From the NCBI GenBank assembly GCA_033442325.1, contig JAWQFM010000028.1, forward strand, positions 282,405 to 308,779: a stretch of DNA of 26,375 nt, given 5' to 3'. Each line of letters opens with the position of its first letter. Within the stretch, counting starts at the first letter, position 1. Positions 8,600-22,483 of the stretch are shown piece after piece. The DNA is from Salpingoeca rosetta (Eukaryota; Protista; Choanoflagellata). Below the pieces are notes generated by a model that ran no database searches, had not been told where the DNA came from, and saw only the letters and a program-made list of their open reading frames with translations. Made by a program: the position numbers and the translations under genes.

Positions 8600-9922
8600 T
8601 CACATGTTGCAAAGGGCAATCTGTTGGGGGTCAATGATGAGCACGGAGGTGGCGCTGCCCGGGATGCCATACAGCTTGCCATTGGGAGCCGCAATGGTGG
8701 CGGACCAGCCGTTGCCGTCGGGAACAAGTGACGTGTCGTCAATGTCGTTGCTGTTGTTGGGATCAAACACGAGAATCCCGCTCGCGTGCAGCGGCATCGC
8801 ATACAGCTTGCCATCAAACGCGCTCACGGCTGCCCCGTTGTACTGGCAGCAATTTGCATCAAAGGAGCTGCCAACAAAGGCCGTCTCAGTTGACGCCCCA
8901 TCCGGCGAGATGCGCAGGATGCCCTCCGCTGCAAAGGGCATGGCGTAGATGAAGCCGTTGTGGACCACCGCGCCCGACCACGCCCGCCCGGAGCTGCCCG
9001 ACACTGAGACCGTCTGGTATGAGTCATCGCTGGGGTCGATGACAAGCACGCTCTGCGCATCGTTTGGCGGCGCGTAGATGAGGCCATCTGTGAACAGGGC
9101 GCCCGTGCGCCACTTGGACCCGCCAGCCAGCAGGCCAGAAATCTCTGAGGTGGTGTTGTCGCTTGGGTCGATGATGAGAATCGGGTCGGCGTTGAGTGGG
9201 ATCGCAAAGATGCGCCCGTCATCAGCCATGGCACCGCCAACCCACTTGGCCTCAAGGTCGGGGTTGGAGCTGACGGTGATGGTCGTCTCGTCCACCGTTT
9301 GCGTGAGCGGGTCGATGATCAGCACGCTCTCTGCACTGTATGGGATGCCGTAGATGAGGCCGGTCTGAGCAAGCACGCCGCCGTACCACTTTGCGTCTCC
9401 GGAAGATACCAGCATGGACGTGTTGTCCGCCGTGTCCGTCGTCGTATCGATGGCCAGCACCGAGCTTGCCGCATAAGGGATGCCGAAGATGATGCCCGTG
9501 TCTGGGTGCAACACGCCACCAGACCACAGCCCCGTGTTGCCTGGCTCAAACCCGGAGATGGTTGTCGTGTCCATCACTTGGTCAGGAGTGCACTGGGGCT
9601 CTATGGTCGTTGTTGCTGCCGCAGTTGTTGTCGTTGTAGTTGCAAAGCCACCTTTGCCATTGCCAGTGCGGTTGAGGTACACGTCGACGAGCGTCTGCAA
9701 GGTGGCGATGCGCTGCTCCAGCCCGGCAATGAGCCCGTTCACATCCACCCCATTCACCAGCACCGCCTGTGAAGGGGACGTTGTGTTCACAAACACGTTT
9801 CCCGCCTCATCCTCCCGAATCACGGCCCCATCCACCAATGCAACAGCAAGCAGTGCAGCAGCCACGAGGAGCAACAAGAAAGACAGGCGAATCCTGCTCA
9901 TCGTCATCTTTGACAACTGCAT
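8600..9922 (-). CDS. Intronless secreted protein: signal peptide, short beta segment plus coiled coil, Thr-rich linker, seven ~45-aa repeats (predicted 7-bladed beta-propeller)
   Basis: Uninterrupted 440-aa ORF. Hydrophobic leader LSFLLLLVAAALLAVALVDG; heptad-like VNGLIAGLEQRIATLQTLVDVY; linker TTTTTTAAATTT; seven repeats of consensus W-x-G-G-x-L-x2-3-G-x-I-Y-x-I-P-x2-A-x-S-V-L-x-I-D-P. The start could instead be the Met at 9907 or 9901. Confidence 0.88.
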   Translation of the reverse strand: MQLSKMTMSRIRLSFLLLLVAAALLAVALVDGAVIREDEAGNVFVNTTSPSQAVLVNGVDVNGLIAGLEQRIATLQTLVDVYLNRTGNGKGGFATTTTTTAAATTTIEPQCTPDQVMDTTTISGFEPGNTGLWSGGVLHPDTGIIFGIPYAASSVLAIDTTTDTADNTSMLVSSGDAKWYGGVLAQTGLIYGIPYSAESVLIIDPLTQTVDETTITVSSNPDLEAKWVGGAMADDGRIFAIPLNADPILIIDPSDNTTSEISGLLAGGSKWRTGALFTDGLIYAPPNDAQSVLVIDPSDDSYQTVSVSGSSGRAWSGAVVHNGFIYAMPFAAEGILRISPDGASTETAFVGSSFDANCCQYNGAAVSAFDGKLYAMPLHASGILVFDPNNSNDIDDTSLVPDGNGWSATIAAPNGKLYGIPGSATSVLIIDPQQIALCNM

Positions 9923-10009: not shown

Positions 10010-10450
10010 ATGCTGTCGTGTGGCGTGGTGGCGCGGGCTGTTGCGGCCTGTTGTGCGGCGTTGCTTGTGGCTGCAGTGTGCAGTGCGCCTGGTGTGAGTG
10101 CGCACAGTGGCCGCGGCGAGCTGTTTGAGCTGCTGGATCGTGTGGACTTGAACGCCGACAAGGTCATTTCCTCTGAGGAGGTGGCGCTGTGGGCTGCAGC
10201 AAATGGCGCCACAACAGCGGCAGGCACCAACCACTCCTTCACCCAAGAGCATGTCCTCGCCCTGTCCAAGCTTCTCTCCAGCCCAATCCTGGACGGTGTG
10301 TGTGTGTGTGCGTGTGTGTGTGCGTGCGTGTGTGTGTTTGTGTGTGTGTGTGTGTGTGTTTGTGTGCGTGTGTGTGTTTTCTTTATGTTGATGTGCTTGT
10401 GCACATGCCCGTCGCATTCTGCAACACTGTTCTCAACCCCTACCCCTCCC

Positions 10451-10506
<56 letters not shown>

Positions 10507-10743
10507 ACTGACGCGGCAGGCACCGTGCCGGTGGAAGTCCACACGTCGCTGTTGAACAACAGCCGCCTGGCCATCATGTGGGTGACGGAGGTCCCAACGA
10601 AGACATCCACGGTTGAGTACAGCACGGACGGATCGCACTCGTTCTCCAAGTCCATTCAGGGATCCACGCACACTTACACCGCCGGCGGATGGAAGGGCGT
10701 CATCCACGAGGTATGTGTGTGTGTGTCTCTGTGTGTGTGTGTC

Positions 10744-10794
<51 letters not shown>

Positions 10795-12190
10795 TTTGAC
10801 TGTGTTGAATGGTCGAGCTGTGTGGGGGTTGACTTTACTGTGCTGTCTTGTTGGTTTAACCCTACTCACGCCTTGACATCCTCCTTCTTACACCAAAAAT
10901 GACACCTCCCCTCTCTTCCTCCTGCAAACCCCGAAGGTGCACATGCCGGAGTTTCCCGCCAACACGCGCGTCACATATCACGTGGGCGACCGCGACGGCG
11001 GGTGGAGCGCCATCTACACCGTGCAGACGCCGCCCACTGTTGGCAACAAGCGCACGGCCGACAAGCCACTGCGCATCGCCACTTTTGGCGATATGGGCAC
11101 ATACATCCCGCTCGGCTACAAGGTGTGTGTGCTCTGTGTGTGTGCTGTTTGTGTACTGTGTGCTGTGTGTGTGTGTGTGTGTGCAAACTACAGCTGTGTG
11201 GGCTGACGGCTTGTCGCATGGCTGCGTGCTGTGTTGTGGTTTCTGTGCACAGGTGTGCGAGCAGATGGAGGAGGATCACAAGAAGAAGCCGCTCGACCTC
11301 ATTGTTCATCAGGGCGACATCGCATACGCGTCCACAGCAGTCACCGCTGGTCAGGGTAGCCGCATCTGTCTGTCTGTCTGTGTATGTGTGTGTGTGTGTG
11401 TGTATGTCTGCGTGTGTCTCTGTGTGCTTGTCTGTCTGGGTGTCATCTGTGCTTGATGTGAGGGCGTGTTCTGCATGGAGGCAGCCGTGTACACCCTTTC
11501 CTGACGCATATCACTGCCGTGGTCATATGTACAGACGGAACTGACGATGAAGACGGCTCAGACACCGTCGGCGAAGAGCAGGTGCGTCTATGGGTGTGTG
11601 TGTGCATTTTCGCGTGGGTGTTTACTTGTTCATGTACAAACATACATATGGCTGATTTCTTTCGTGTGTGCCTTGACTCTTGGCTTGTTCGTTGTGTGTG
11701 TGTGTGTGTGCGTGTGCGAATTGTAGGAATTCGTCTGGGACATGTGGGCGCAGCAGGTGCAGCCTCTCGCTGGTGAGTGGCTCAACCGTCAGTGCACACG
11801 CGCAATCTGAGAACCCGTCCACTCCTTCCTCAAGGGAAGGGGTGGTACCTTACCACCACCACCACCACCCAAACTATTTCCTTCACAATCACCACCGTCA
11901 TCATCATCGTCATCGCCATCGCCGCCATGGTCATGTCACGATCATTTGATGAACACGTGCGTTGATGTGCCGGGTTTTGTTCATTGTTCTCACCTTTACT
12001 CATGGTTGCTGCTATGCGTTGCGGCCCGCCACCAGCCAACATCCCATATGTGGCCGGTGTCGGCAACCACGAGAAGTTCTTCAACTACTCCTCCTACCTC
12101 GCCCGCTTCAAGAACCCAGAGCCATGGTACGGTGTGATGTATGTGTGTGTGTGTGTGTGTGTTTGATTGTGTGTGTGTGTGTGTGTGTGT

Positions 12191-12228
<38 letters not shown>

Positions 12229-12875
12229 TGACACTGTTTGTGTGTGTGTGTGTGTGTGTTTTTATGTTGTGTGCCATTACACACGTCTTGATCCGAGTGC
12301 ACGCTTGTCCCAGCCAGTGTGCACCCATCGTGCGTCATTTGAGTCACACCAGTGGCTGTGTTCACAACCATCACTGCTTTTCCTATCTGAAGGGGCGGGT
12401 CACCAAGCGCAATTGACAACGCCACGTTCTGGTTCAGCTTCGACTTTGGCCTTGGTAAGTCAGCAATGACTTTGTGGATGTGCGTGCGCGCGCGTGCGAA
12501 GTTATGCTTGTACTTGCGTGTGTCATCTGTCGATGTATCCCCAATCACACACGCACAACACACGTCCACACGTCCACATGCTTCGTTGCTCACTAACTTC
12601 CGTTTTCCTCGTCCACAACCGGCGTCCACTTCCACCTACCCGCCCTTATTCCTGTTAACTTGTCTTTACATGGTCCCCACCACCACCACCATCATCACCA
12701 TCATCATCACCACCACCACCACTGTATCAGTGCACTTCACGATGATGAGCACGGAGCACGACTACACGCCCGGCTCCCGCCAGCATCGCTGGATTGTCGA
12801 CGACCTCAACGCCGCCGTCGCCAACAGGGGCACCGTGCCCTGGATCATCCTCGTCGGTACGCTTGTCGTTTGTGT

Positions 12876-12937
<62 letters not shown>

Positions 12938-13334
12938 CTGTGTGTCTGTGTGCCTGTGTGTCTGTGTGTGTGTTTGTGTGCTCGTACTCGTTTTGTTTTC
13001 GCGCACTGGCGCACGTCTTCATGCACCACACTTGCACTTGTCGAGGCCCTACGATTGCCACCCATGCCCTCCTCCTCATGTGTATCTCCTCAATGCCTCT
13101 CACCTCAACTCACGCGACGCCATTGCTTGTCACTGCTGCTCGTTCACAGTGCCAAAGTGGACATGTACTTCTGTGGCCACATGCACATTTACGAGGTGAG
13201 CACGTGACTCAAGTTGGGTGAATCACTTCACCTCTCCACCCTTTCTTTCTTAGCAACAGCAGCAGTCCGCACTCACTCACTCACTCACTCACTCACTCAC
13301 TCATTCACTCACACACACACACACACACTCTCTC

Positions 13335-13396
<62 letters not shown>

Positions 13397-13405
13397 TCTC
13401 TCTCA

Positions 13406-13448
<43 letters not shown>

Positions 13449-14169
13449 ACTCACTCACCCCTCCGTTAGCGTATCCACGCGGTGAACAACGGAACGGTGG
13501 TGAACGCCGCCTCCACCATCTACCGCAACCCGTCTGCCCCCGTGCACGTCGTGCAGGTAGTCGCTCATTTGTTATGCTGTATTGTGTACGTGTTTCCACA
13601 TGCTTATGTCCGTTCATCTGCCTTTCCATGCCCATTCCGCTGTCTGTCTGTTTGTCTGCGTGCGTGCCTGTGCTCACTGAAACGCCGCCGCTCTGGACTG
13701 GTTCTCCTCTGCGCGCGCCATGACAGGGCAACGCTGGCGTGTTTGAGGATGTGGAGTGGGTGACGCCAACGCCCGGTTGGAGTGCCGTCCGCAAGAGCCG
13801 CATCGGTTCGTGCACTCGGTGATGTGAGAGAGAGAGAGAGAGCGTGTGTGTGTGTGTTTGTGTTTGCTTGTGTGTACGACTCGTGCGTGTTGATCCCTGT
13901 GTGTGCAGTTTCGTTCTGACTTCCTCATAATCACCCATCTTCACTCGACATGTATGCGCTACTCTCTTCCCCCAACCAACCCCCCAACACACACACGCAC
14001 ACACGTCCGTCATGCCTTTGCGGGTGACTTGACATGTTATTCCTCCACCTCCACGCACGCAACAGGGTATGGCCGGTTTGAAGTGTACAACGCCACACAC
14101 CTTTTCTACGAGAGCCTGGAGCTTGCCACCCGCGAGGCCATGGACCAGTTCTGGATCATCAAGTCCTGA
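10010..14169 (+). CDS. Secreted purple acid phosphatase (FN3-like N-domain, metallophosphoesterase, C-terminal domain) with an N-terminal EF-hand; one internal exon not recoverable
   Basis: Exons 10010-10295, 10520-10710, 10937-11122, 11253-11349, 11535-11581, 11727-11772, 12036-12126, 12393-12454, 12731-12856, [gap], 13150-13195, 13470-13556, 13727-13805, 14066-14169. PAP motifs FGDMG, HQGDIAY, VGNHE and CGHMHIYER; also [35 protein letters not shown] and GYGRF. The expected GHRP motif after PWIILV is absent. Confidence 0.9.
13270..13457. repeat. Compound (CACT)n/(CA)n/(CT)n microsatellite, intronic
   Basis: Directly visible in PAP intron 13196-13469. Confidence 0.9.
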
Positions 14170-14756
14170 ACAACGAACGCCATCCATGCCGTACGCCGAC
14201 AACAAGCCAAAACCACACAATCAAAGCATGTTCTGTGTTACCCTTTCCCATCATCGCCCACCCATCTCTGCATCCAACAGCTTCAACCAAAGCCCCTTTT
14301 CGTTGTGACATGAACTTGTCGCGGCGGCACATGTTTTCGTTCCCGACACCATTAAAAGTGGCATTGCACAAAATCAATGCCTGCACGCATTTTTGTTTGT
14401 CGCGGTCGCCGCGCAACTTGCAAACCCAGCCACGCTTGGCATCCTGTGGGGGTGACGATGGATATGGCGGCTCTTGCAGGACTGCGTGCGAGTATGAGTG
14501 AGCGTGGGTGAGTTTGGGAAGCACGACGACTCCTCGTCACCCACGCTTGCATCCATTTCTCTCCGTTCCACTGCTGCTTCATCACCAACAACAACACACA
14601 CTTCTTTCCTTGCCCGAGCAAGAGAGAGAGCACATCAACGGCAACAACACCAACAGCACCAACAACACCAGCACCACCAACAACAACACCAGCAGACGGA
14701 CGAGCCGATCTCAACCTCATCAACCTCCTTGCCCACCCCCTTGCACGAAACCAACC

Positions 14757-15010
14757 ATGGCTGCCTCGTTGCGATCTTTTGTGATGTTGCTGCTGGCGTG
14801 CTGTTTTGCGCTCGCTGTCATCACCGGCCCTTCCATGATGGCGGATGCCCGCCCCGTGGCCGTCGCAGCCGATGCTGTGGCTGTGCAGCAACAGCAAGCG
14901 GAGGTCGTCCCCTTTGCACGCAACCGCCGCAGCAAGCATAGCGCCAAGACTGGCTTTCCTGCCGAACGATTCCCTCTCTCAAAGGAGGGCGCCCGCGCCA
15001 GGCGTGACGT

Positions 15011-15073
<63 letters not shown>

Positions 15074-15077
15074 TGCC

Positions 15078-15128
<51 letters not shown>

Positions 15129-15620
15129 GAAGTGTGGATACACAACCTTCCTGCGCTTGAATATCTCTCTGCCCCTGCCCCTGCCCCTGTCTCTGCCCCT
15201 GCCCCTGCCCCCTTGCTCTTCTCTTCATCCCCACCGCTCTTTCATCGCCCTAACCCCCCCCCCACTCCACTATCGTTCCCTTCTCTCAGGCTGAGGTCGA
15301 CCCCGAACTGGAGGAGCGATTCCGTAAACAGGTGCTTGGCGTGAAGAACGCAAAGCAACACCGCATGCGTGCCGCCGCCGCCCCTGCCGCCCCTGCCGTG
15401 GTACGGAGACATATCCATCATGAGAGCATGATGCGCGTTGAAAGGGAACATCTTGTCCATGTCCATGTTGCCGCAGGCAGCTTGTGTGCTTGTGTAGTTG
15501 CTTGTTGTGAAGTTGCTCCGATCTTTCTCTCACAATGACATGACCCGTATACTTGTGTATCCTCGTGCCTGCTTGCAGTCTGAGCCATTCAAGAGCTCTC
15601 ACTCCAAGAACCACAAGTAA
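14757..15620 (+). CDS. Small secreted prepropeptide-like protein (~134 aa) with signal peptide and two furin-type sites; function unknown
   Basis: Exon 1 14757-15008 (ACCATGG start, GTAAGT donor), exon 2 15290-15400 (pyrimidine-rich CAG acceptor, GTACGG donor), exon 3 15579-15620 (TTGCAG acceptor, TAA). All junctions are phase 0. Product: MAASLRSFVMLLLACCFALAVITGPSMMADARPVAVAADAVAVQQQQAEVVPFARNRRSKHSAKTGFPAERFPLSKEGARARRDAEVDPELEERFRKQVLGVKNAKQHRMRAAAAPAAPAVSEPFKSSHSKNHK. The exon 2 end and exon 3 are less certain than exon 1. Confidence 0.75.
15013..15128. repeat. (GT)n followed by (GTCT)n microsatellite, intronic
   Basis: Starts immediately after the GTAAGT donor at 15009. Confidence 0.9.
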
Positions 15621-15958
15621 CGCCAGACCCACCAAGCACCTCCTCCAAGTCTTTTGTCCCCCCCCCCTTGTTTTTCCACCACACACACACACACACACAC
15701 ATCAACTGCTTTTGCCCCTCACTTATGATGAATGCTGTGTTATGTTACAACGTTATTTGTCTTGTTACCTTGTCTTGTTGTGATTGCTTTGCCGACGCCA
15801 TGCCCTGCCACCAGCGTTCAAATCAGTCCAAATACACACCAACAGCTCCAGCTTGCTCCAATTGTAATGGGTTGGTTTACTTGTGGTCAGCAGGTTACGT
15901 TATTGATGAGAACACAACACGCGCCTCTTCCCTTCCCCCTCCCCACAAGTGTCATTTT

Positions 15959-16019
<61 letters not shown>

Positions 16020-16099
16020 TACGAAACAGAACAAAGCACAAAACCATTCTCAGTGTCGACAAGCAAAGAGAGAAAGCCAGAATAGCACATGCGCGCGCA

Positions 16100-17017
16100 T
16101 TAACGGTGATGGCGACGCATGGTGTCAACCACGTCGAGCTGAGTCAGCACCTGCCAGACAGCCATATCCCAGCGGTTGCGCGGATGCGCCTCCTCGCTCT
16201 CTGCGCGAGCCGTGCTGATACGCCGGCCAATGTGGTCGCGCAGGCTTGGCGACTCGCCAGCGCGCACGTGCTCTGGCTGCTGCAGTGGCACGCGCGGCCC
16301 TTCGATGCTCTCCATCTCCATATCCGACAGCTTGCCTGCCTCGCCCTCCTCCAAGATGACCGGCGTGATGAGGTGCGGCTCAACCAGACGTCCGCGCTCA
16401 CCCTCGTCCTCGCCTTCCTCAACCTCAACGGCAGTGCCGCTGTCGGTGCGGTCGCGGTGGCGGCGGCGGCGGCACACACGTGCCATCCACGGCCATGGGT
16501 CGGTCGTGATAGAGTCTGGCAGGAGGTTGAACATGGTGGACCATGCCAGCGGCAGGAAAGCAATGAGCACGCATGCGCCCCACTGGTTTGCACTCAGCGG
16601 CTCCGTCTCGATGGCCGTGCCGCCAAACTCGGTGATGAGGACCTGAATGATGAGGGAGAACACCCACACGCCGCAGAAGATCCAGTGGCGGGTGAGGCCG
16701 GCCAGGATGTTGAGCTCGCCCCGAAGCTTGCGGCAGTTAAGCTGGTTCACAAGCTGACTCAGCACAAATGAGGTGAAGATGATCGTGTAGTGGCGCACGG
16801 AAAACTGGGCCTTCTCGTTCTTGGCTGGGTCCTTGTGCGAGTTAAACCAATCCTCGCCAGCGTACAGGATCGTCAGGAACGTCGCAGACTGCCGCAAGAC
16901 AATAGTGTGATACAAGGGGTAATTGGTGGGGCTTGTGAGTGTGTGAATGTACAAAAAGACTATGTGGGTGGGAATGTGCACGTAAAATGCAACAACACAG
17001 GCATCGCGTGCAACCAT

Positions 17018-17048
<31 letters not shown>

Positions 17049-18670
17049 CTGCATGACGACTTGGAAGATCATGCGCCTGATCATGTATGTGGTGAGGAGG
17101 GGCTCGCTTCGGTCATATGGCTTGTACGTGAGCAGCTTCTCCGTGGGTGGCTCCGTCGCCAAAGCGAGCGCTGCAAACGAGTCCCTGAACACAAGCACGT
17201 ATGTATATGTGTATGTACGTGTGCGTGTGTGAGGAAGAGGTGAGACGAAGACTTGTGCGACGAATATGTGTGAAACGACAAGCATCAACTTGCAGGCCAA
17301 TCAGCATCCCCCGCGAACATATGCCGTGCACACTCCAACAACAAATCATGCCTGCTAAAGGCGACATGAAAGAGCAGACAAACGCACATGATGAGGTTGA
17401 TCCACAGCAGCTGGACAGGCTTGAGCGGGGAGTTGTCGGCGTTGCCATTCGGGTCGCTCAGGACAGCAACAAGGACGACGATGATGGCAGTAAAGTTGAC
17501 CGTCAGCTGGAACTGCAGGAACTTGCGAATGTTGTCAAACACATTGCGGCCCCACTTGATGGCGTTGACAATGGAGGCGAAGTTGTCGTCCAGCAGCACA
17601 ATCGCAGACGCCTCCTTGGCCGCCTCGGTACCAGAGAGACCCATGGCAAAGCCAACATCCGCCTTCTTCAGCGCAGGGCCATCGTTCACGCCGTCGCCAG
17701 TCACAGCAACAACATCGCGCTGCTTCTGCAGCAGCGTCACCAGCTTGAGCTTGTCGAGGGGCGATGAGCGGGCAAGAATGCGGAGACGGGGCAGAAGTGG
17801 AATCAGCTCCTCCTCGCTCTTGTTCCGGAAGTCAGGGCCCTCCATGCAGATGTGGTCCTCAGATTCCTGCACGTGGTGGCCCGGGCATTTGTTTGCGTTG
17901 TGTTTGTGTGACGATGTGAGAGGATGTGTACTTGCAGTTGGCCATGTGCGCACGTGAACATGAAAATCACACCAATACAACGATCAAGGCGACAACTGCT
18001 CTCGCTAACACGCACACACACACACACGTTTTCTTGCTCTCTCTCTCTCGCACACACACGCACACACGTCGCAATCTGAACACAACGACACAAACCACTC
18101 ACGTCAAAGAGGCCGCAATTCTTGCCAATGTTGCGGGCAATGGCAGCAGCGTCACCGGTCACCATACGCACAGTCACGCCTGCGCTCTGACACGCGCGCA
18201 CGGCGTCGCGCACCTCCGGACGCAGCGGATCCTGGATACCAACCAGGCCCTGGTGGTGGTGATGGTGGTGTCGGTGGTGTTGGTTGTGGTTGAGACATCA
18301 GGAGCGTGCAATCGCCGCTTGTGATAATGCCGTCGTTGTTGTGGGAACTGGTTATACTCAAGCACACACACACACGCACACACACACGCGCACACACGCC
18401 GACGTACGAGGAGGACGAGTTCTGGCTTGTCGGTGTCTGTCCAGTCCTGGTCGTTGTCTGAGCAGCGGAATGCCATTCCGATGGAGCGAAGCGCTTTCTC
18501 GCCCATCACCGTCAACTTGTCCTCAAACCGCTTGCGCGCATCAGCAGTCATCTCTTTCACGCTCCCATCACTGTGTGTGTGTGTGTTTGTGTGTATGTCG
18601 TTGTTATTGTTGCACATGAGCGAATGTAAGAACTCAACAGTAAGTTCAACGCGATCTTCAACACTGCCCC

Positions 18671-18712
<42 letters not shown>

Positions 18713-21155
18713 CAGCACCAGCACCGCGACTTCAACTCACGCTGCGACGTATCGCGTGGACATCTCGAGGAGGACCTCTGCGGCGCCCTTAACGTGCTGG
18801 ATGTTTTTTCCTTCGCCCGAGACCGGGGTACCGCTGGAGCTCACGACCGTGGACATGCGCTTCTTGTCAGAGGAGAACGAATACACCTTCTCAACCTGAG
18901 TCGATGTGCAGGAGGGGGCACAGAGAGGGGGGGGGGTGAGAGGCATGGGTGAATAAGACGGAAGGTGAATGATGGTGGTGGTGGTGGTTTGGGCGGACAT
19001 GAGCGCTCGAGGAATACAATGAAACGAGCGAGCAACGAGAGTGGAGAATTGGTTCAACAACAATTGCTCACAAACTCCATGCGCCACGCACCTCCGTTGC
19101 CTCGCGGATCTTGGTGTAGTCCTGGCCAAGGGTTCCGAGAAAACCAAGTAGTGCACCTGAACATGAAGGCAGGAGGGAGGAAGTGTGGAAGATGACACAT
19201 TGTCATGTGAGCACGCAAACGGCAGCGAACCGATGACGCACGCGGGCATGAAGACATGCACACCTACGCACACCTACGCACACATGTGCACACACACACA
19301 CACACACGGGACGCACATTCGGTCCTGCTTCCGACAAAGGTGACGACGCCTTCCTCGTTGATGCTCTCGTATGCGGTGCTGTTGACAGCAATGCTGTTGT
19401 ACAGCAGCCGCAGCATGTCGTTGTTCATCTTGTCAGACTTGCCCTGTGTCAGCAAGTGGACGCAAACGAGTGTGGTTGAAGAGTAAGATGAGAAACAGGA
19501 TGGACAAAGAGCTGCACACAAACCAAACACAACACAACACAACACACTGCACCCCAACACACTACACTGCACTACAACACAGCGCGATTAAACAACGCGG
19601 CAAAGAACACGACACAACTGTAGCAGATGGCAACACTGCTAAAGCCACCACCAGCCACATACCGTCTTGTTGTCGATTGGCAACTCTTCCTTCTCGTTGG
19701 AGTCGAACATGGTGTCCAGCAGCACGCCTTCAACCACCGTCATCTTGTTCTGCGTGAGTGTTCCCGTCTTGTCGCTGCAGATTGTGGTGGCGCCACCCAT
19801 TGTCTCGCACGCATCCAAGTGACGCACGAGGTTGTTGTCGCTGTGCACGTGTGCATGGTTGTGCATATGAAGGTGTGCATGTGTGTGTGTGTTTGTGGGT
19901 GAGAAGACGGGAGAGCAAGCAAAGACATGCAGGCGCGGCTTGAAGGTGGATCGGAACCACAACTGCATTTGAACAGCGACGTGCACACACACACACACAA
20001 GCAGCAGCACCACACACACACACACACAATGCGGCACAACAAGCAGCAACACAACAACCACCACGCTGCCAAGCATACCGCATCATGTTCTTCATGGAGT
20101 AAGCGAGGGCGATGGTGACAGCGAGCGGCAACCCCTCCGGCACAGCCACAACGACGATGCTGATGGCAATGATGAGAAAGTCGACGGCGTTGTTGGCGGC
20201 GTCGGTTCCGTTCACGTCAGAGCCCGCCACTGCAAAGTACTTGATCAGCTGCGCACGCACAGGGAACAAAAAAAAAAAGTCGACGAGACCAGGGATGTTT
20301 GGATTATCGTTTGTGCGGGTGGTTGATGGGGGGGGGGTAGTTGTGAGGCCCATCTTTGTTCAGAAGTGTGGAGGCTTGAAAAGCACGCGAAGAACACACA
20401 CGCACATGTAAGCACCACACACACACATACACACACACACACGCACATGTAAGCACCACCACACACACACACACACACAACCACACAGCCACATGTACAC
20501 ACCTGTGCGAAGAAGATGAGGAGGGCGGTGATGATACCAAAGTTACCGATGAAGTTTGCGAGCTTTGAGAGCTTGACCTGAAGCGGGGTGTCCTCGTTTG
20601 GCGTGCGCAGGGACATGAGGATACGGCCTTTGAACGAGTGCTCGCCAACGCAGATGACAAGCATCACGCCAGACCCGCCCGTCAGCTGTTGTTGGAGAGA
20701 GGATGAAGGTGATGGAGAAGGGAAGGAGGCGTGAGAAGATGTGACAAAACGGGAAGGAGGCGTGAGAAGGTGTGGCAGCGGCAAGGAGGTGATGCAATCA
20801 TGAATACTACATCAACAACACAACACATAAGCAGATAAACACACAAACAAACAAACAAAGACAACTGAACAAATAACCAACCAACACCCACAAACACGCA
20901 CACACACACACACACACCTGCGTGCCGGAGAGGAAGAAAGGGTCGCGGTTGGGGGCGTGGCCTTTCTTCTTGTGCTCGCTCTCACCGGTGGCGGATGACT
21001 CGTCCGCAACAACAGACTCGCCAGATACAAAGACGCCGTCTGTGACACACGAGGTGTCATGTGGGGTGGAGGGGTGTGAGGAGTGGAACAAAGGTTACGT
21101 GTGCGAACAGTCGAGGCCATCGCTAGGTTCATAAAGCATTGACGTCCGCGTTCGT

Positions 21156-21186
<31 letters not shown>

Positions 21187-22108
21187 TTACAGGCACCACT
21201 GCATGGCTGTGGAACATCGCTTGTTCTCTCTCCAAAAACAACACGACACAACACAACTCAAACACAACACAACACAACACGACACAACACGACACGCGCA
21301 CCTGCTGGGACGACGTCGCCCGTGTCCACGACGACCAGATCGCCAACAACAACTTCATACACGGAGACGCGGAGCTTCTTTCCGTTGCGAATGATCGTCA
21401 CCTCGTGATCGTTCTTGATTTCGTTGAGACGGCGGAACTGGCGCTCCTTCTGGTAGTCGTTCAGGCTGGTGATGGCAACGACGACGATGATGGCGACAAA
21501 CACGGCAACGCCGTCCTTCCATCCAAGCTCGGGCCCCTCCGTGACCATTCCAATGACAAGACTGATGGTAGCAGCAATGCACAGCATGATGAGCGTCTTA
21601 TCCTGTAACGCCTCCCACACGAGGTGTAGCAGGGAGCGAAACTGGACCGGTGGGAGCTTGTTCACGCCAAAGTGCTCACGGTTGTGCTCCACAACATCGT
21701 CGCTGCTGATGCCCTTGTCCATAGAGGTTTTCAGGTGCTGGCACAGCGCGTCCACACCGCCGATGGACTGCAGCAGCTCGGGGCTCTTGGGATCAACCAG
21801 TGCATACCTGAGAGCATGGAAGGAACAGGATGGTGACGTGAGGAGTGCGCCGGGGTGAGGACAGGGGGGGGGGGTGGGAGCGAGAAGCGCGGTGCAGGCA
21901 ATTGCTAACAGCAACTTCGAACAAGAGTCATTGCGAACCACGACAAAGTCACGCAGGCTCGCAAGCGCATCATTCAGGGCACGCACACAGCAAGCGCATG
22001 GGACACACACACACACACACACACACATGCAGCACGCACGCGCACACACACATGCAGCACACATGCAGCACGCACGCACACACACACACACACTCCCACA
22101 CACACACT

Positions 22109-22150
<42 letters not shown>

Positions 22151-22483
22151 CAGCACACATACAACGCACAGGTCATCGATGGAGAGCTCCTGGCCGCTGG
22201 CGCCCATGGTTGTCTTGAGATGCGCGGCGGCTGTCTCGCTGTCAAAGGCGGGCTTGGAGACGGATTCCTTACGACCGTTCTCCAAGTCATCCGGTGTCGG
22301 CGATGACGCGCCGGTGGCTTCGGGCGCATTGCCGTTCACGCCGTTCATGACACCGCCGTTGTGCTGGGGCAAGAGGTCAGTCTCGCTCTCCTGCACCACG
22401 TTGCCGATGCTTGTTGGGTTTCCGATAGCGATGCGGTAGCTATCGGTTCTTTCGTCGATGTTCGTCTCTGCTGTCGACTTCAT
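16100..22483 (-). CDS. ATP2B: Plasma-membrane-type calcium-transporting P-type ATPase (P2B, PMCA)
   Basis: Exons 22483-22170, 21807-21302, 21039-20918, 20685-20503, 20248-20079, 19840-19663, 19443-19317, 19156-19092, 18895-18741, 18570-18408, 18249-18103, 17866-17388, 17184-17049, 16888-16100, all phase-consistent. Motifs: [127 protein letters not shown]. Confidence 0.97.

What the first reader, a model, noticed from the sequence alone, without database searches (positions are those of the whole stretch)
14757..15620. Orphan prohormone/neuropeptide-like precursor in a probable choanoflagellate
Seen: a three-exon ~134-aa ORF, not visible intact in the ORF track, with a signal peptide (likely cleaved after ADA, residue 31) and an Ala/Val/Gln-rich pro-segment. 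Two perfect R-x-R-R sites, RNRR (14919-14930) and RARR (14994-15005), bracket a 21-mer, SKHSAKTGFPAERFPLSKEGA. An acidic segment (DAEVDPELEE) follows, with further basic sites (RFRK, RMR). There is no Cys after the signal peptide and no recognisable folded domain. Established: R-x-[KR]-R is the furin/kexin-family convertase consensus, and signal peptide + spacer + basic-site-flanked peptides is the layout of animal prohormones and fungal Kex2-processed pheromones. Inference: this could be a lineage-specific secreted peptide signal (colony formation, mating) or a cationic antibacterial peptide in a unicellular relative of animals. No Gly directly precedes either site, so amidation is not predicted.
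Basis: partly seen in the sequence, partly recalled or inferred. Interest (0 to 1): 0.75.

Follow-up and report, generated by a model that had tools for sequence, protein, structure and literature searches.

The report
Small secreted orphan protein, furin-type sites
This is the already annotated but unstudied gene PTSG_08862 of the choanoflagellate Salpingoeca rosetta; it encodes a small, unfolded, probably secreted protein with two furin-type cutting motifs, expressed mostly in solitary swimming cells, and the idea that it is a hormone-like peptide precursor is possible but rests on motifs alone.

Summary
Exons 14757-15008, 15290-15400 and 15579-15620 (+), with GT-AG phase-0 introns, give the 134-aa protein described. 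It is identical to the public model "hypothetical protein PTSG_08862 [Salpingoeca rosetta]".

- **Expression.** Published RNA-seq tables give FPKM 38 in solitary swimmers, 6-14 in thecate cells, 0 in chain colonies and 0-20 in rosettes.
- **Protein features.** It has a signal-peptide-like N-terminus, RNRR and RARR sites in a stretch modelled as disordered, and no Pfam domain.
- **Relatives.** There is no paralogue in its own genome and no credible relative among 1.84 billion protein representatives.
- **Processing enzymes.** The genome encodes at least two S8 + P-domain convertases and a multi-domain M14 carboxypeptidase, so cutting is mechanistically plausible.

The case for a peptide signal is weak:
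- Two R-x-[KR]-R sites arise in 2% of shuffles of this Arg-rich sequence and in 3.8% of mechanical ORFs from this genome.
- 31% of S. rosetta genes are species-unique.
- There are no repeated peptides, no amidation signal and no orthologues to test site conservation.
- The released peptides are not antimicrobial-like.

Verdict: a real small secretory orphan protein and a candidate furin-type proprotein. Processing and signalling are unproven. The scan has no other note of this kind for this gene.

The parts
14632..14694 (+). CAACAACAC-type repeats in the probable 5' leader, 63-125 nt upstream of the start codon
   Evidence: Tandem Repeats Finder rows with periods 9, 15 and 18. The transcription start is not known.
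14757..15008 (+). Exon 1, residues 1-84: start codon, signal-peptide-like leader, Ala/Val/Gln-rich pro-segment, both R-x-R-R sites and the peptide between them
   Evidence: Translation. 100% match to residues 1-84 of P0001/PTSG_08862. GC1/2/3 of 0.68/0.54/0.69 is coding-like.
14757..14849 (+). Predicted signal peptide, residues 1-31: Arg6, hydrophobic core 8-22, Gly-Pro break, A-D-A before the likely cut. An alternative cut after Ser26 is possible.
   Evidence: Kyte-Doolittle window means of 2.6-2.75 over residues 7-23. The -3/-1 rule allows cuts after residues 26 and 31. AlphaFold helix 3-22. No SignalP was available.
14919..14930 (+). RNRR, residues 55-58, furin-type site followed by Ser
   Evidence: It lies in a stretch with pLDDT about 45-55.
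14931..14999 (+). Middle peptide, residues 59-81, as expected after convertase cuts and removal of the two C-terminal Arg.
   Evidence: 23 residues, net charge +3, two Pro, hydrophobic moment 0.23. Cleavage is inferred, not shown.
14994..15005 (+). RARR, residues 80-83, furin-type site followed by Asp
15009..15289 (+). Intron 1, 281 nt, phase 0, GTAAGT...CAG, with a (GT)n/(CTGT)n microsatellite at 15013-15129 and (CTGCCC)n at 15166-15211
15290..15400 (+). Exon 2, residues 85-121: acidic start, RFRK, RMR, predicted helix, Ala/Pro-rich end
   Evidence: Translation. Matched in the own-genome protein search at E 2.3e-16. AlphaFold helices 76-86 and 89-114, with pLDDT block means up to 81.
15401..15578 (+). 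Intron 2, 178 nt, phase 0, GTACGG...CAG; no structured RNA detected
   Evidence: Fold z-score +1.6. No Rfam family reaches its threshold in 14300-16100.
15579..15620 (+). Exon 3, residues 122-134 plus the TAA stop: a hydrophilic, basic tail with no membrane anchor and no ER-retention motif
   Evidence: Translation; identical to the end of P0001.

Best explanation
PTSG_08862 is a real, spliced, transcribed, species-restricted gene of Salpingoeca rosetta. It encodes a 134-aa preproprotein with no folded domain. Inferred mechanism: the N-terminal leader takes it into the ER and is removed, most likely after Ala31. In the late Golgi, the cell's furin/kexin-like S8 + P-domain convertases cut the exposed, disordered chain after RNRR58 and RARR83. 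An M14 carboxypeptidase then trims the terminal Arg residues. The products would be a pro-segment (about residues 32-56), a 23-residue middle peptide (59-81) and a 51-residue C-terminal piece (84-134) with one predicted helix, all released outside the cell. Transcript levels are highest in solitary swimmers and about zero in chain colonies, so the products would belong to the swimmer's secretome. Shown: gene model, transcription, orphan status, lack of fold, motifs, and presence of the enzymes. Inferred: translation, ER entry, cleavage and any biological role. My odds: secretory-pathway protein 0.75; cut at one or both sites 0.4-0.5; a dedicated extracellular signal about 0.1.
For: The model is identical to the public annotation, and that gene set was refined with RNA-seq from eight conditions (PMC4054682). 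Expression (FPKM): ThA1 5.95, ThM 9.46, ThAM 14.2, SwM 38.5, CCM 0, RCA1 0, RCA2 2.04, RCAM 19.8. The gene sits in the cluster of 393 genes 'upregulated in Swim', with log2 Swim/Colony 2.72, P 2.9e-11. The base composition by codon position, 0.68/0.50/0.70, resembles neighbouring genes. The first ATG has a strong context. The leader is hydrophobic and ends in A-x-A. Residues 23-75 are disordered, pTM 0.20, and the Atlas model has pLDDT 0.51. Both R-x-R-R sites lie in that disordered part, with Ser and Asp at P1'. The own genome holds S8 + P-domain genes at C1:1.688 Mb (with a furin-like Cys-rich GF_recep_IV tail) and C9:1.065 Mb, plus two more P-domain loci. It also holds tandem M14 domains at C17:0.80 Mb. 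Conserved processing sites in the S. rosetta phoenixin precursor already suggested that prohormone processing occurs in this species (PMC9004410).
Against: There is no direct evidence of translation, secretion or cleavage. Read counts are low, at most 67 per sample. The motif pair has a 2-4% background. Orphan status prevents any conservation test, and 31% of S. rosetta genes are species-unique. The hydrophobic core is fairly long (15-16 residues), so a signal anchor is not excluded. No dense-core-type vesicles were seen in S. rosetta (PMC7934909), which argues against regulated, neuropeptide-style release but not against constitutive secretion.
Confidence: 0.5

Rival explanations
1. It is a small secreted or ER-targeted orphan protein whose two R-x-R-R motifs are chance products of an Arg-rich (12%), GC-rich, low-complexity sequence. 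Any cutting is incidental and the fragments have no signalling role. The protein could be a young, fast-evolving component of the swimmer's cell coat or secretome.
For: P(>=2 sites) is 0.02 in composition-matched shuffles, and 3.8% of mechanical ORFs in this genome show the pair. With about 11,600 genes, several small leader-bearing proteins should show the pair by chance (inference). There are no relatives, no paralogues, no repeated peptide and no amidation Gly. 31% of genes are species-unique.
Against: Accessible R-x-[KR]-R sites in disordered secretory proteins are usually cut where furin-type enzymes are present (established knowledge of animal furin). Those enzymes are encoded here. Both sites are the full four-residue consensus with favourable Ser and Asp at P1'.
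Confidence: 0.33
2. The transcript is not translated. It is a young or non-coding RNA whose 134-codon ORF, leader-like start and basic motifs are accidental.
For: The gene is an orphan with low read counts. Ala makes up 20% of residues. Long ORFs are common in all six frames of this GC-rich window, with 57 of >=150 aa in 26 kb. The frame even stays open through the whole of retained intron 1 and ends inside exon 2 (ORF 14508-15344).
Against: The frame is kept across two phase-0 introns. The first ATG has a strong context and is followed at once by a textbook leader. GC by codon position matches neighbouring coding exons. No ncRNA family or structured intron was found that would explain a host-gene role.
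Confidence: 0.1
3. The leader is an uncleaved signal anchor, making a type II membrane protein with a roughly 110-residue disordered ectodomain. Cutting at the R-x-R-R sites would then shed that ectodomain.
For: The hydrophobic core spans 15-16 residues with a single Arg before it. AlphaFold draws one helix over residues 3-22.
Against: A Gly-Pro break and a small-x-small motif follow the core, as in cleaved leaders. The core is shorter than the roughly 20 residues typical of membrane spans (my knowledge).
Confidence: 0.05
4. It is the precursor of a cationic antibacterial peptide used against prey or competing bacteria.
For: The fragments are net positive at +3, +3 and +2 with the basic tails counted. 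Expression is higher in most cultures fed mixed bacteria: ThM, ThAM, SwM and RCAM versus ThA1, RCA1 and RCA2.
Against: The middle peptide has a hydrophobic moment of only 0.23, two Pro and mean hydrophobicity below zero. The best 18-residue window in the C-terminal piece reaches only 0.32. The chain-colony sample, also fed mixed bacteria, has zero reads.
Confidence: 0.02

Closest known systems
Phoenixin (SMIM20) precursor of S. rosetta (Yanez-Guerra et al. 2022, PMC9004410)
   Same: It is a small leader-bearing precursor in the same species, with basic processing sites. It was taken as a sign that prohormone processing predates animals.
   Different: Phoenixin is conserved from choanoflagellates to mammals, cleavage sites included. 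PTSG_08862 has no relative at all and no Pfam family. The two were not aligned directly here.
Animal furin-processed small secreted propeptides (for example osteocrin/musclin and urotensin-2B precursors)
   Same: The layout is shared: leader, disordered pro-region, R-x-[KR]-R sites and no Cys-rich fold. Such families appear among the nearest protein-language-model neighbours.
   Different: Those neighbour scores (0.77-0.83) are at the level that shuffled proteins reach a third of the time. There is no sequence homology. This shows likeness of kind only.
Classical metazoan neuropeptide precursors
   Same: Both have a signal peptide and basic sites flanking short peptides.
   Different: There are no repeated or conserved peptide copies and no Gly for amidation. 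The sites are furin-type R-x-R-R rather than plain KR/RR. No dense-core-like vesicles have been reported in S. rosetta.
Fungal Kex2-processed pheromone precursors (alpha-factor type)
   Same: Both have a leader, a pro-region and cleavage after paired basic residues by a kexin-family enzyme.
   Different: Alpha-factor-type precursors carry tandem copies of one peptide separated by spacers. Here the three products are unrelated to each other (read directly).
Amidated peptide precursors of Chlamydomonas (Luxmi et al. 2019, as cited in PMC9004410)
   Same: They are lineage-specific secreted peptides of a ciliated protist, processed by convertase-like enzymes.
   Different: Those peptides are amidated and were found by mass spectrometry. 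Here there is no amidation signal and no peptide evidence.

Membership tests
Furin/kexin-type proprotein (convertase substrate) | N-terminal signal peptide that brings the chain into the secretory pathway | tested here: met
   Hydrophobic core at residues 8-22, Arg6, a Gly-Pro break and A-D-A before residue 32; helix 3-22. This is rule-based only, because no SignalP was available.
Furin/kexin-type proprotein (convertase substrate) | R-x-[KR]-R site(s) in an exposed, unfolded stretch | tested here: met
   RNRR at 55-58 and RARR at 80-83. pLDDT block means are 44-55 over residues 31-80, and RARR sits at the start of a short modelled helix, 76-86.
Furin/kexin-type proprotein (convertase substrate) | A subtilisin S8 + P-domain convertase encoded by the same organism | tested here: met
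   There are four P_proprotein loci. S8 and P domains lie together at C9:1.065 Mb and C1:1.688 Mb, the latter with a GF_recep_IV tail. Catalytic residues were not inspected.
Furin/kexin-type proprotein (convertase substrate) | Cleavage at the sites actually occurs | not testable with these tools
   This needs tagging with a Western blot, or peptidomics.
Furin/kexin-type proprotein (convertase substrate) | Sites conserved in orthologues | tested here: inconclusive
   No orthologue or paralogue was found to compare.
Metazoan-type neuropeptide / prohormone precursor | Homology to a known peptide family | tested here: not met
   Pfam gives nothing above threshold. HMMER against 1.84 billion representatives gives only the protein itself and one spurious repeat protein.
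Metazoan-type neuropeptide / prohormone precursor | Multiple copies of a peptide, or a peptide more conserved than its spacers | tested here: not met
   The three products are unrelated in sequence. There are no relatives with which to measure conservation.
Metazoan-type neuropeptide / prohormone precursor | Gly before the basic site as an amidation donor | tested here: not met
   The residues before the sites are F-A and G-A. After trimming, the C-termini would end in ...RN and ...RA.
Metazoan-type neuropeptide / prohormone precursor | Storage in dense-core vesicles, regulated release and a receptor | not testable with these tools
   Literature only: large electron-dense vesicles were seen in M. 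brevicollis but not in S. rosetta (PMC7934909).
Fungal Kex2-processed repeat pheromone precursor | Tandem repeats of the mature peptide separated by KR/RR spacers | tested here: not met
   There is no internal repeat in the 134 residues. Tandem repeats at the DNA level lie only in the leader and intron 1.
Cationic antimicrobial peptide precursor | Strongly cationic, amphipathic mature peptide | tested here: not met
   The middle peptide has charge +2/+3, hydrophobic moment 0.23 and two Pro. The best window elsewhere reaches 0.32.

The most novel reading that the evidence does not exclude
PTSG_08862 is a lineage-specific, convertase-processed secreted peptide signal of S. rosetta. It would be made by solitary swimmers and switched off in chain colonies, and would act between cells, for example on settlement, colony formation or mating. 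That would make it the first species-restricted (not animal-conserved) peptide signal precursor in a choanoflagellate.
Probability: 0.1. Interest if true: 0.75.

Novelty: new member of a known kind. Interest (0 to 1): 0.3.

Why it matters
Whether peptide signalling predates animals is an open question. So far only phoenixin, plus a secreted nucleobindin (NUCB) homologue that lacks the nesfatin-1 peptide, have been traced to choanoflagellates, and those by homology (PMC9004410). A fast-evolving, convertase-cut, cell-type-specific peptide in S. rosetta would show that unicellular relatives of animals also invent their own secreted peptides, as animals do. S. rosetta has gene editing (my knowledge, not checked here), so this could be tested directly. 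As it stands, the gene is one of several thousand uncharacterised species-unique genes. Its motif pattern is expected by chance in a few small secreted proteins per genome, so it is a reasonable but unremarkable candidate.

Tried and rejected
- **Homology.** Pfam on exon 1, exon 2 and the whole public protein gave nothing; the best hit was 14 bits against a 25-bit cut-off. The word search with exon 1 found only the gene's own record.
- **The one HMMER hit.** Reading all 1.84 billion representatives gave one extra hit, P0002, at E 7e-9. I reject it. It is the sum of 21 sub-hits of -2.8 to +5.2 bits each on a 2576-aa tandem-repeat protein, with bias 35.6, and BLASTP finds no alignment at E <= 100.
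- **Paralogues.** The own-genome DNA and protein searches found none.
- **Protein Atlas.** Neighbours fall below the noise line.
- **Fold search.** Not run, because the model has pTM 0.20.
- **Genes on other frames.** Minus-strand ORFs 14352-14939 and 15270-15698, and the +2 frame ORF 14498-14941, have no family.
- **snoRNA or ncRNA host gene.** No Rfam family reaches its threshold; mir-129 scores 21.9 against 48.6 bits. Intron 2 folds no better than shuffles.
- **Literature.** No paper names PTSG_08862 in its main text. A 2025 chromatin and expression paper has no supplements held as text.
- **Earlier scan notes.** A search for other prohormone-like genes found none.
- **Assembly comparison.** The old assembly GCA_000188695.1 is identical to the window over the gene and 1.5 kb on each side, so it adds no information.
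- **Not done.** There was no search of choanoflagellate transcriptome nucleotide data.

Full report
**What is there.**
The window is GC-rich (0.52-0.60) eukaryotic DNA full of dinucleotide and tetranucleotide microsatellites. They are separated by introns with GTAAGT...CAG and GTACGG...CAG ends, both in phase 0.

A word search with exon 1 alone, given by reference, returned a single protein, P0001. It is 134 aa, 100% identical, and named by NCBI "hypothetical protein PTSG_08862 [Salpingoeca rosetta]". Its sequence equals the three translated exons in order.

Searches of my own model were made exon by exon, by reference. Every whole-protein step used the public record P0001 that the exon-1 search returned.

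The window is contig 28, bases 282405-308779, of a 55.4-Mb, 68-contig assembly. The older assembly GCA_000188695.1 is base-for-base identical over the gene and 1.5 kb on each side.

**Is it a gene that is used?**
The public gene set was built from ab initio, EST and homology evidence, then refined with RNA-seq from eight conditions (PMC4054682). That paper's supplementary tables list PTSG_08862 with these FPKM values:
- thecate samples: 5.95, 9.46 and 14.2
- solitary swimmers: 38.5
- chain colonies: 0
- rosette samples: 0, 2.04 and 19.8

Raw counts are 13, 16, 24, 67, 0, 4, 43 and 0, listed in the order thecate x3, swimmers, rosettes x3, chain colonies. [quoted passage not shown] In the group comparison its log2 Swim/Colony is 2.72 (P 2.9e-11) and its log2 Swim/Attach is 1.69 (P 1.6e-4).

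The counts are small because the gene is short and modestly expressed.

Coding signs are consistent but not decisive:
- GC at codon positions 1/2/3 is 0.68/0.50/0.70, like the neighbouring exons (0.56-0.61 / 0.43-0.49 / 0.63-0.76).
- The ATG at 14757 is the first in its frame and has A at -3 and G at +4.
- The frame survives two splices.

Against this, long ORFs are common in every frame of this DNA: 57 of at least 150 aa in 26 kb. No RNA family or structured intron suggests a non-coding host-gene role.

**What the protein looks like.**
Residues 1-31 form a typical leader: one Arg, a 15-16-residue hydrophobic core, a Gly-Pro break and A-D-A. The -3/-1 rule allows cuts after residue 31 or residue 26.

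AlphaFold without an alignment gives pTM 0.20. It draws the leader as a helix, residues 23-75 as disordered, and helices at 76-86 and 89-114 with 10-residue pLDDT block means up to 81. The ESM Atlas's own model has pLDDT 0.51.

There is no Pfam family, no Cys outside the leader, no N-glycosylation sequon, no membrane span, and no retention motif at the C-terminus (read directly).

If both sites are cut and basic tails trimmed, the products are a pro-segment, a 23-residue middle peptide (59-81) and a 51-residue C-terminal piece. The middle peptide has charge +3, two Pro and a hydrophobic moment of 0.23. That is unlike an amphipathic antimicrobial peptide.

**Relatives.**
None were found. HMMER read all 1.84 billion cluster representatives and reported only the protein itself and P0002. 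The underlying collection carries the query's own record under a EukProt source label.

P0002 is a 2576-aa protein of roughly 95-residue tandem repeats. Its E-value comes from adding 21 sub-hits of -2.8 to +5.2 bits, with bias 35.6. BLASTP with composition correction finds nothing at E <= 100, so I treat it as spurious.

The own genome has no second copy at either the DNA or the protein level. Orphan status is thus supported at HMMER sensitivity. It is also ordinary here: 31% of S. rosetta genes are reported as species-unique.

**Can the sites be used?**
The genome has four loci with the proprotein-convertase P domain. At two of them the P domain follows a subtilase S8 domain. One of those continues into a furin-like Cys-rich GF_recep_IV region.

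Tandem M14 carboxypeptidase domains lie at contig 17, 0.80 Mb. Two kexin-like genes were reported in the other sequenced choanoflagellate, Monosiga brevicollis (bioRxiv 10.1101/802215). Conserved cleavage sites in the S. rosetta phoenixin precursor were taken to mean that prohormone processing occurs there (PMC9004410).

Earlier notes of this scan say that paired furin-type sites are conserved in many cohesin-dockerin linkers of this genome. I did not test that and use it only as a lead.

So an exposed R-x-R-R in a secretory protein of this cell has a plausible enzyme. R-x-[KR]-R is the furin type of the constitutive route (my knowledge). No large electron-dense vesicles were seen in S. rosetta (PMC7934909). 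If cutting happens, it therefore resembles furin processing of a secreted proprotein more than neuropeptide maturation in dense-core vesicles.

**How much do the motifs prove?**
Not much on their own. The part after the leader is 12% Arg. Shuffling it gives at least one site in 21% of trials and at least two sites in 2.0%.

As a second null, I took all ATG-ORFs of at least 100 aa in the six frames of the window and seven other loci of this genome. Of these, 22 of 157 have at least one site in residues 32-134, and 6 of 157 (3.8%) have at least two.

With about 11,600 genes, a handful of small leader-bearing proteins should show the pair by chance. That is an inference; the proteome-wide count could not be run. 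The nearest protein-language-model neighbours include small hormone precursors such as urotensin-2B, a diuretic hormone and osteocrin. Their scores of 0.77-0.83 are, by the tool's own statement, reached by shuffled proteins a third of the time.

**Surroundings.**
The public annotation places these genes around PTSG_08862:
- a purple acid phosphatase gene upstream on the same strand (window about 10010-14169)
- a 1177-aa P-type Ca2+-ATPase downstream on the opposite strand (about 16100-22483)
- a 433-aa protein without any family (about 8600-9903, minus strand)
- a phospholipase B-like gene further upstream

Nothing links them functionally to PTSG_08862.

**Verdict.**
The organism guess is right, and "orphan" holds.

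The best-supported reading is a small, unfolded, secretory-pathway protein of solitary swimmers that is probably, but not demonstrably, cut at two furin-type sites. A dedicated peptide signal remains possible (about 0.1). No evidence beyond layout supports it, and the antibacterial alternative fits poorly.

Noticed in passing
window 15013-15129 (intron 1), 15683-15700 and 15960-16016 (downstream of the stop): Intron 1 starts with about 117 nt of (GT)n/(CTGT)n right after the GTAAGT donor. (CA)n runs lie in the probable 3' UTR and beyond, not next to the acceptor. So the '(UG)n at the donor, (CA)n at the acceptor' pattern noted elsewhere in this window (s1-434602) is only half present here.
   Followed up: partly
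P0002 (2576 aa): A giant Ser/Ala/Pro/Thr-rich protein of roughly 95-residue tandem repeats reached E 7e-9 against a 134-aa query. It did so only by summing 21 sub-hits of 5.2 bits or less. This is a caution for reading whole-sequence HMMER E-values on repeat proteins.
   Followed up: yes
PMC4054682 supplementary files 7-13 as held: The captions of the held supplementary files are shifted against their contents. The file captioned 'upregulated in thecate cells' has Swim/Attach and Swim/Colony columns. The one captioned 'colonial cells' has Attach/Colony columns. The one captioned 'read counts and FPKM' holds the cluster heat-map sheets. I read the expression data by column headers, not by captions.
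   Followed up: partly
G000:C1:1687127-1690333 (L003): This is a convertase gene with S8, P domain and a furin-like Cys-rich GF_recep_IV region. It is the furin-type architecture in a choanoflagellate, split over at least two exons.
   Followed up: partly
G000:C17:801929-807582 (L011-L013): Several M14 carboxypeptidase domains lie in tandem within about 6 kb, reminiscent of multi-domain carboxypeptidase D. I did not resolve whether this is one gene or several.
   Followed up: no
window 8600-9922 (-): This is a single-exon ORF of 440 aa by the mechanical ORF list, called as a 433-aa gene in the public annotation, with no Pfam family. It is another uncharacterised gene next to the purple acid phosphatase.
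   Followed up: no
window 14508-15344 (+): The reading frame of exon 1 stays open through the whole of intron 1, where the microsatellite reads as Cys-Val repeats. An intron-retaining transcript would therefore give a 195-aa product from the same ATG with a different C-terminus.
   Followed up: no
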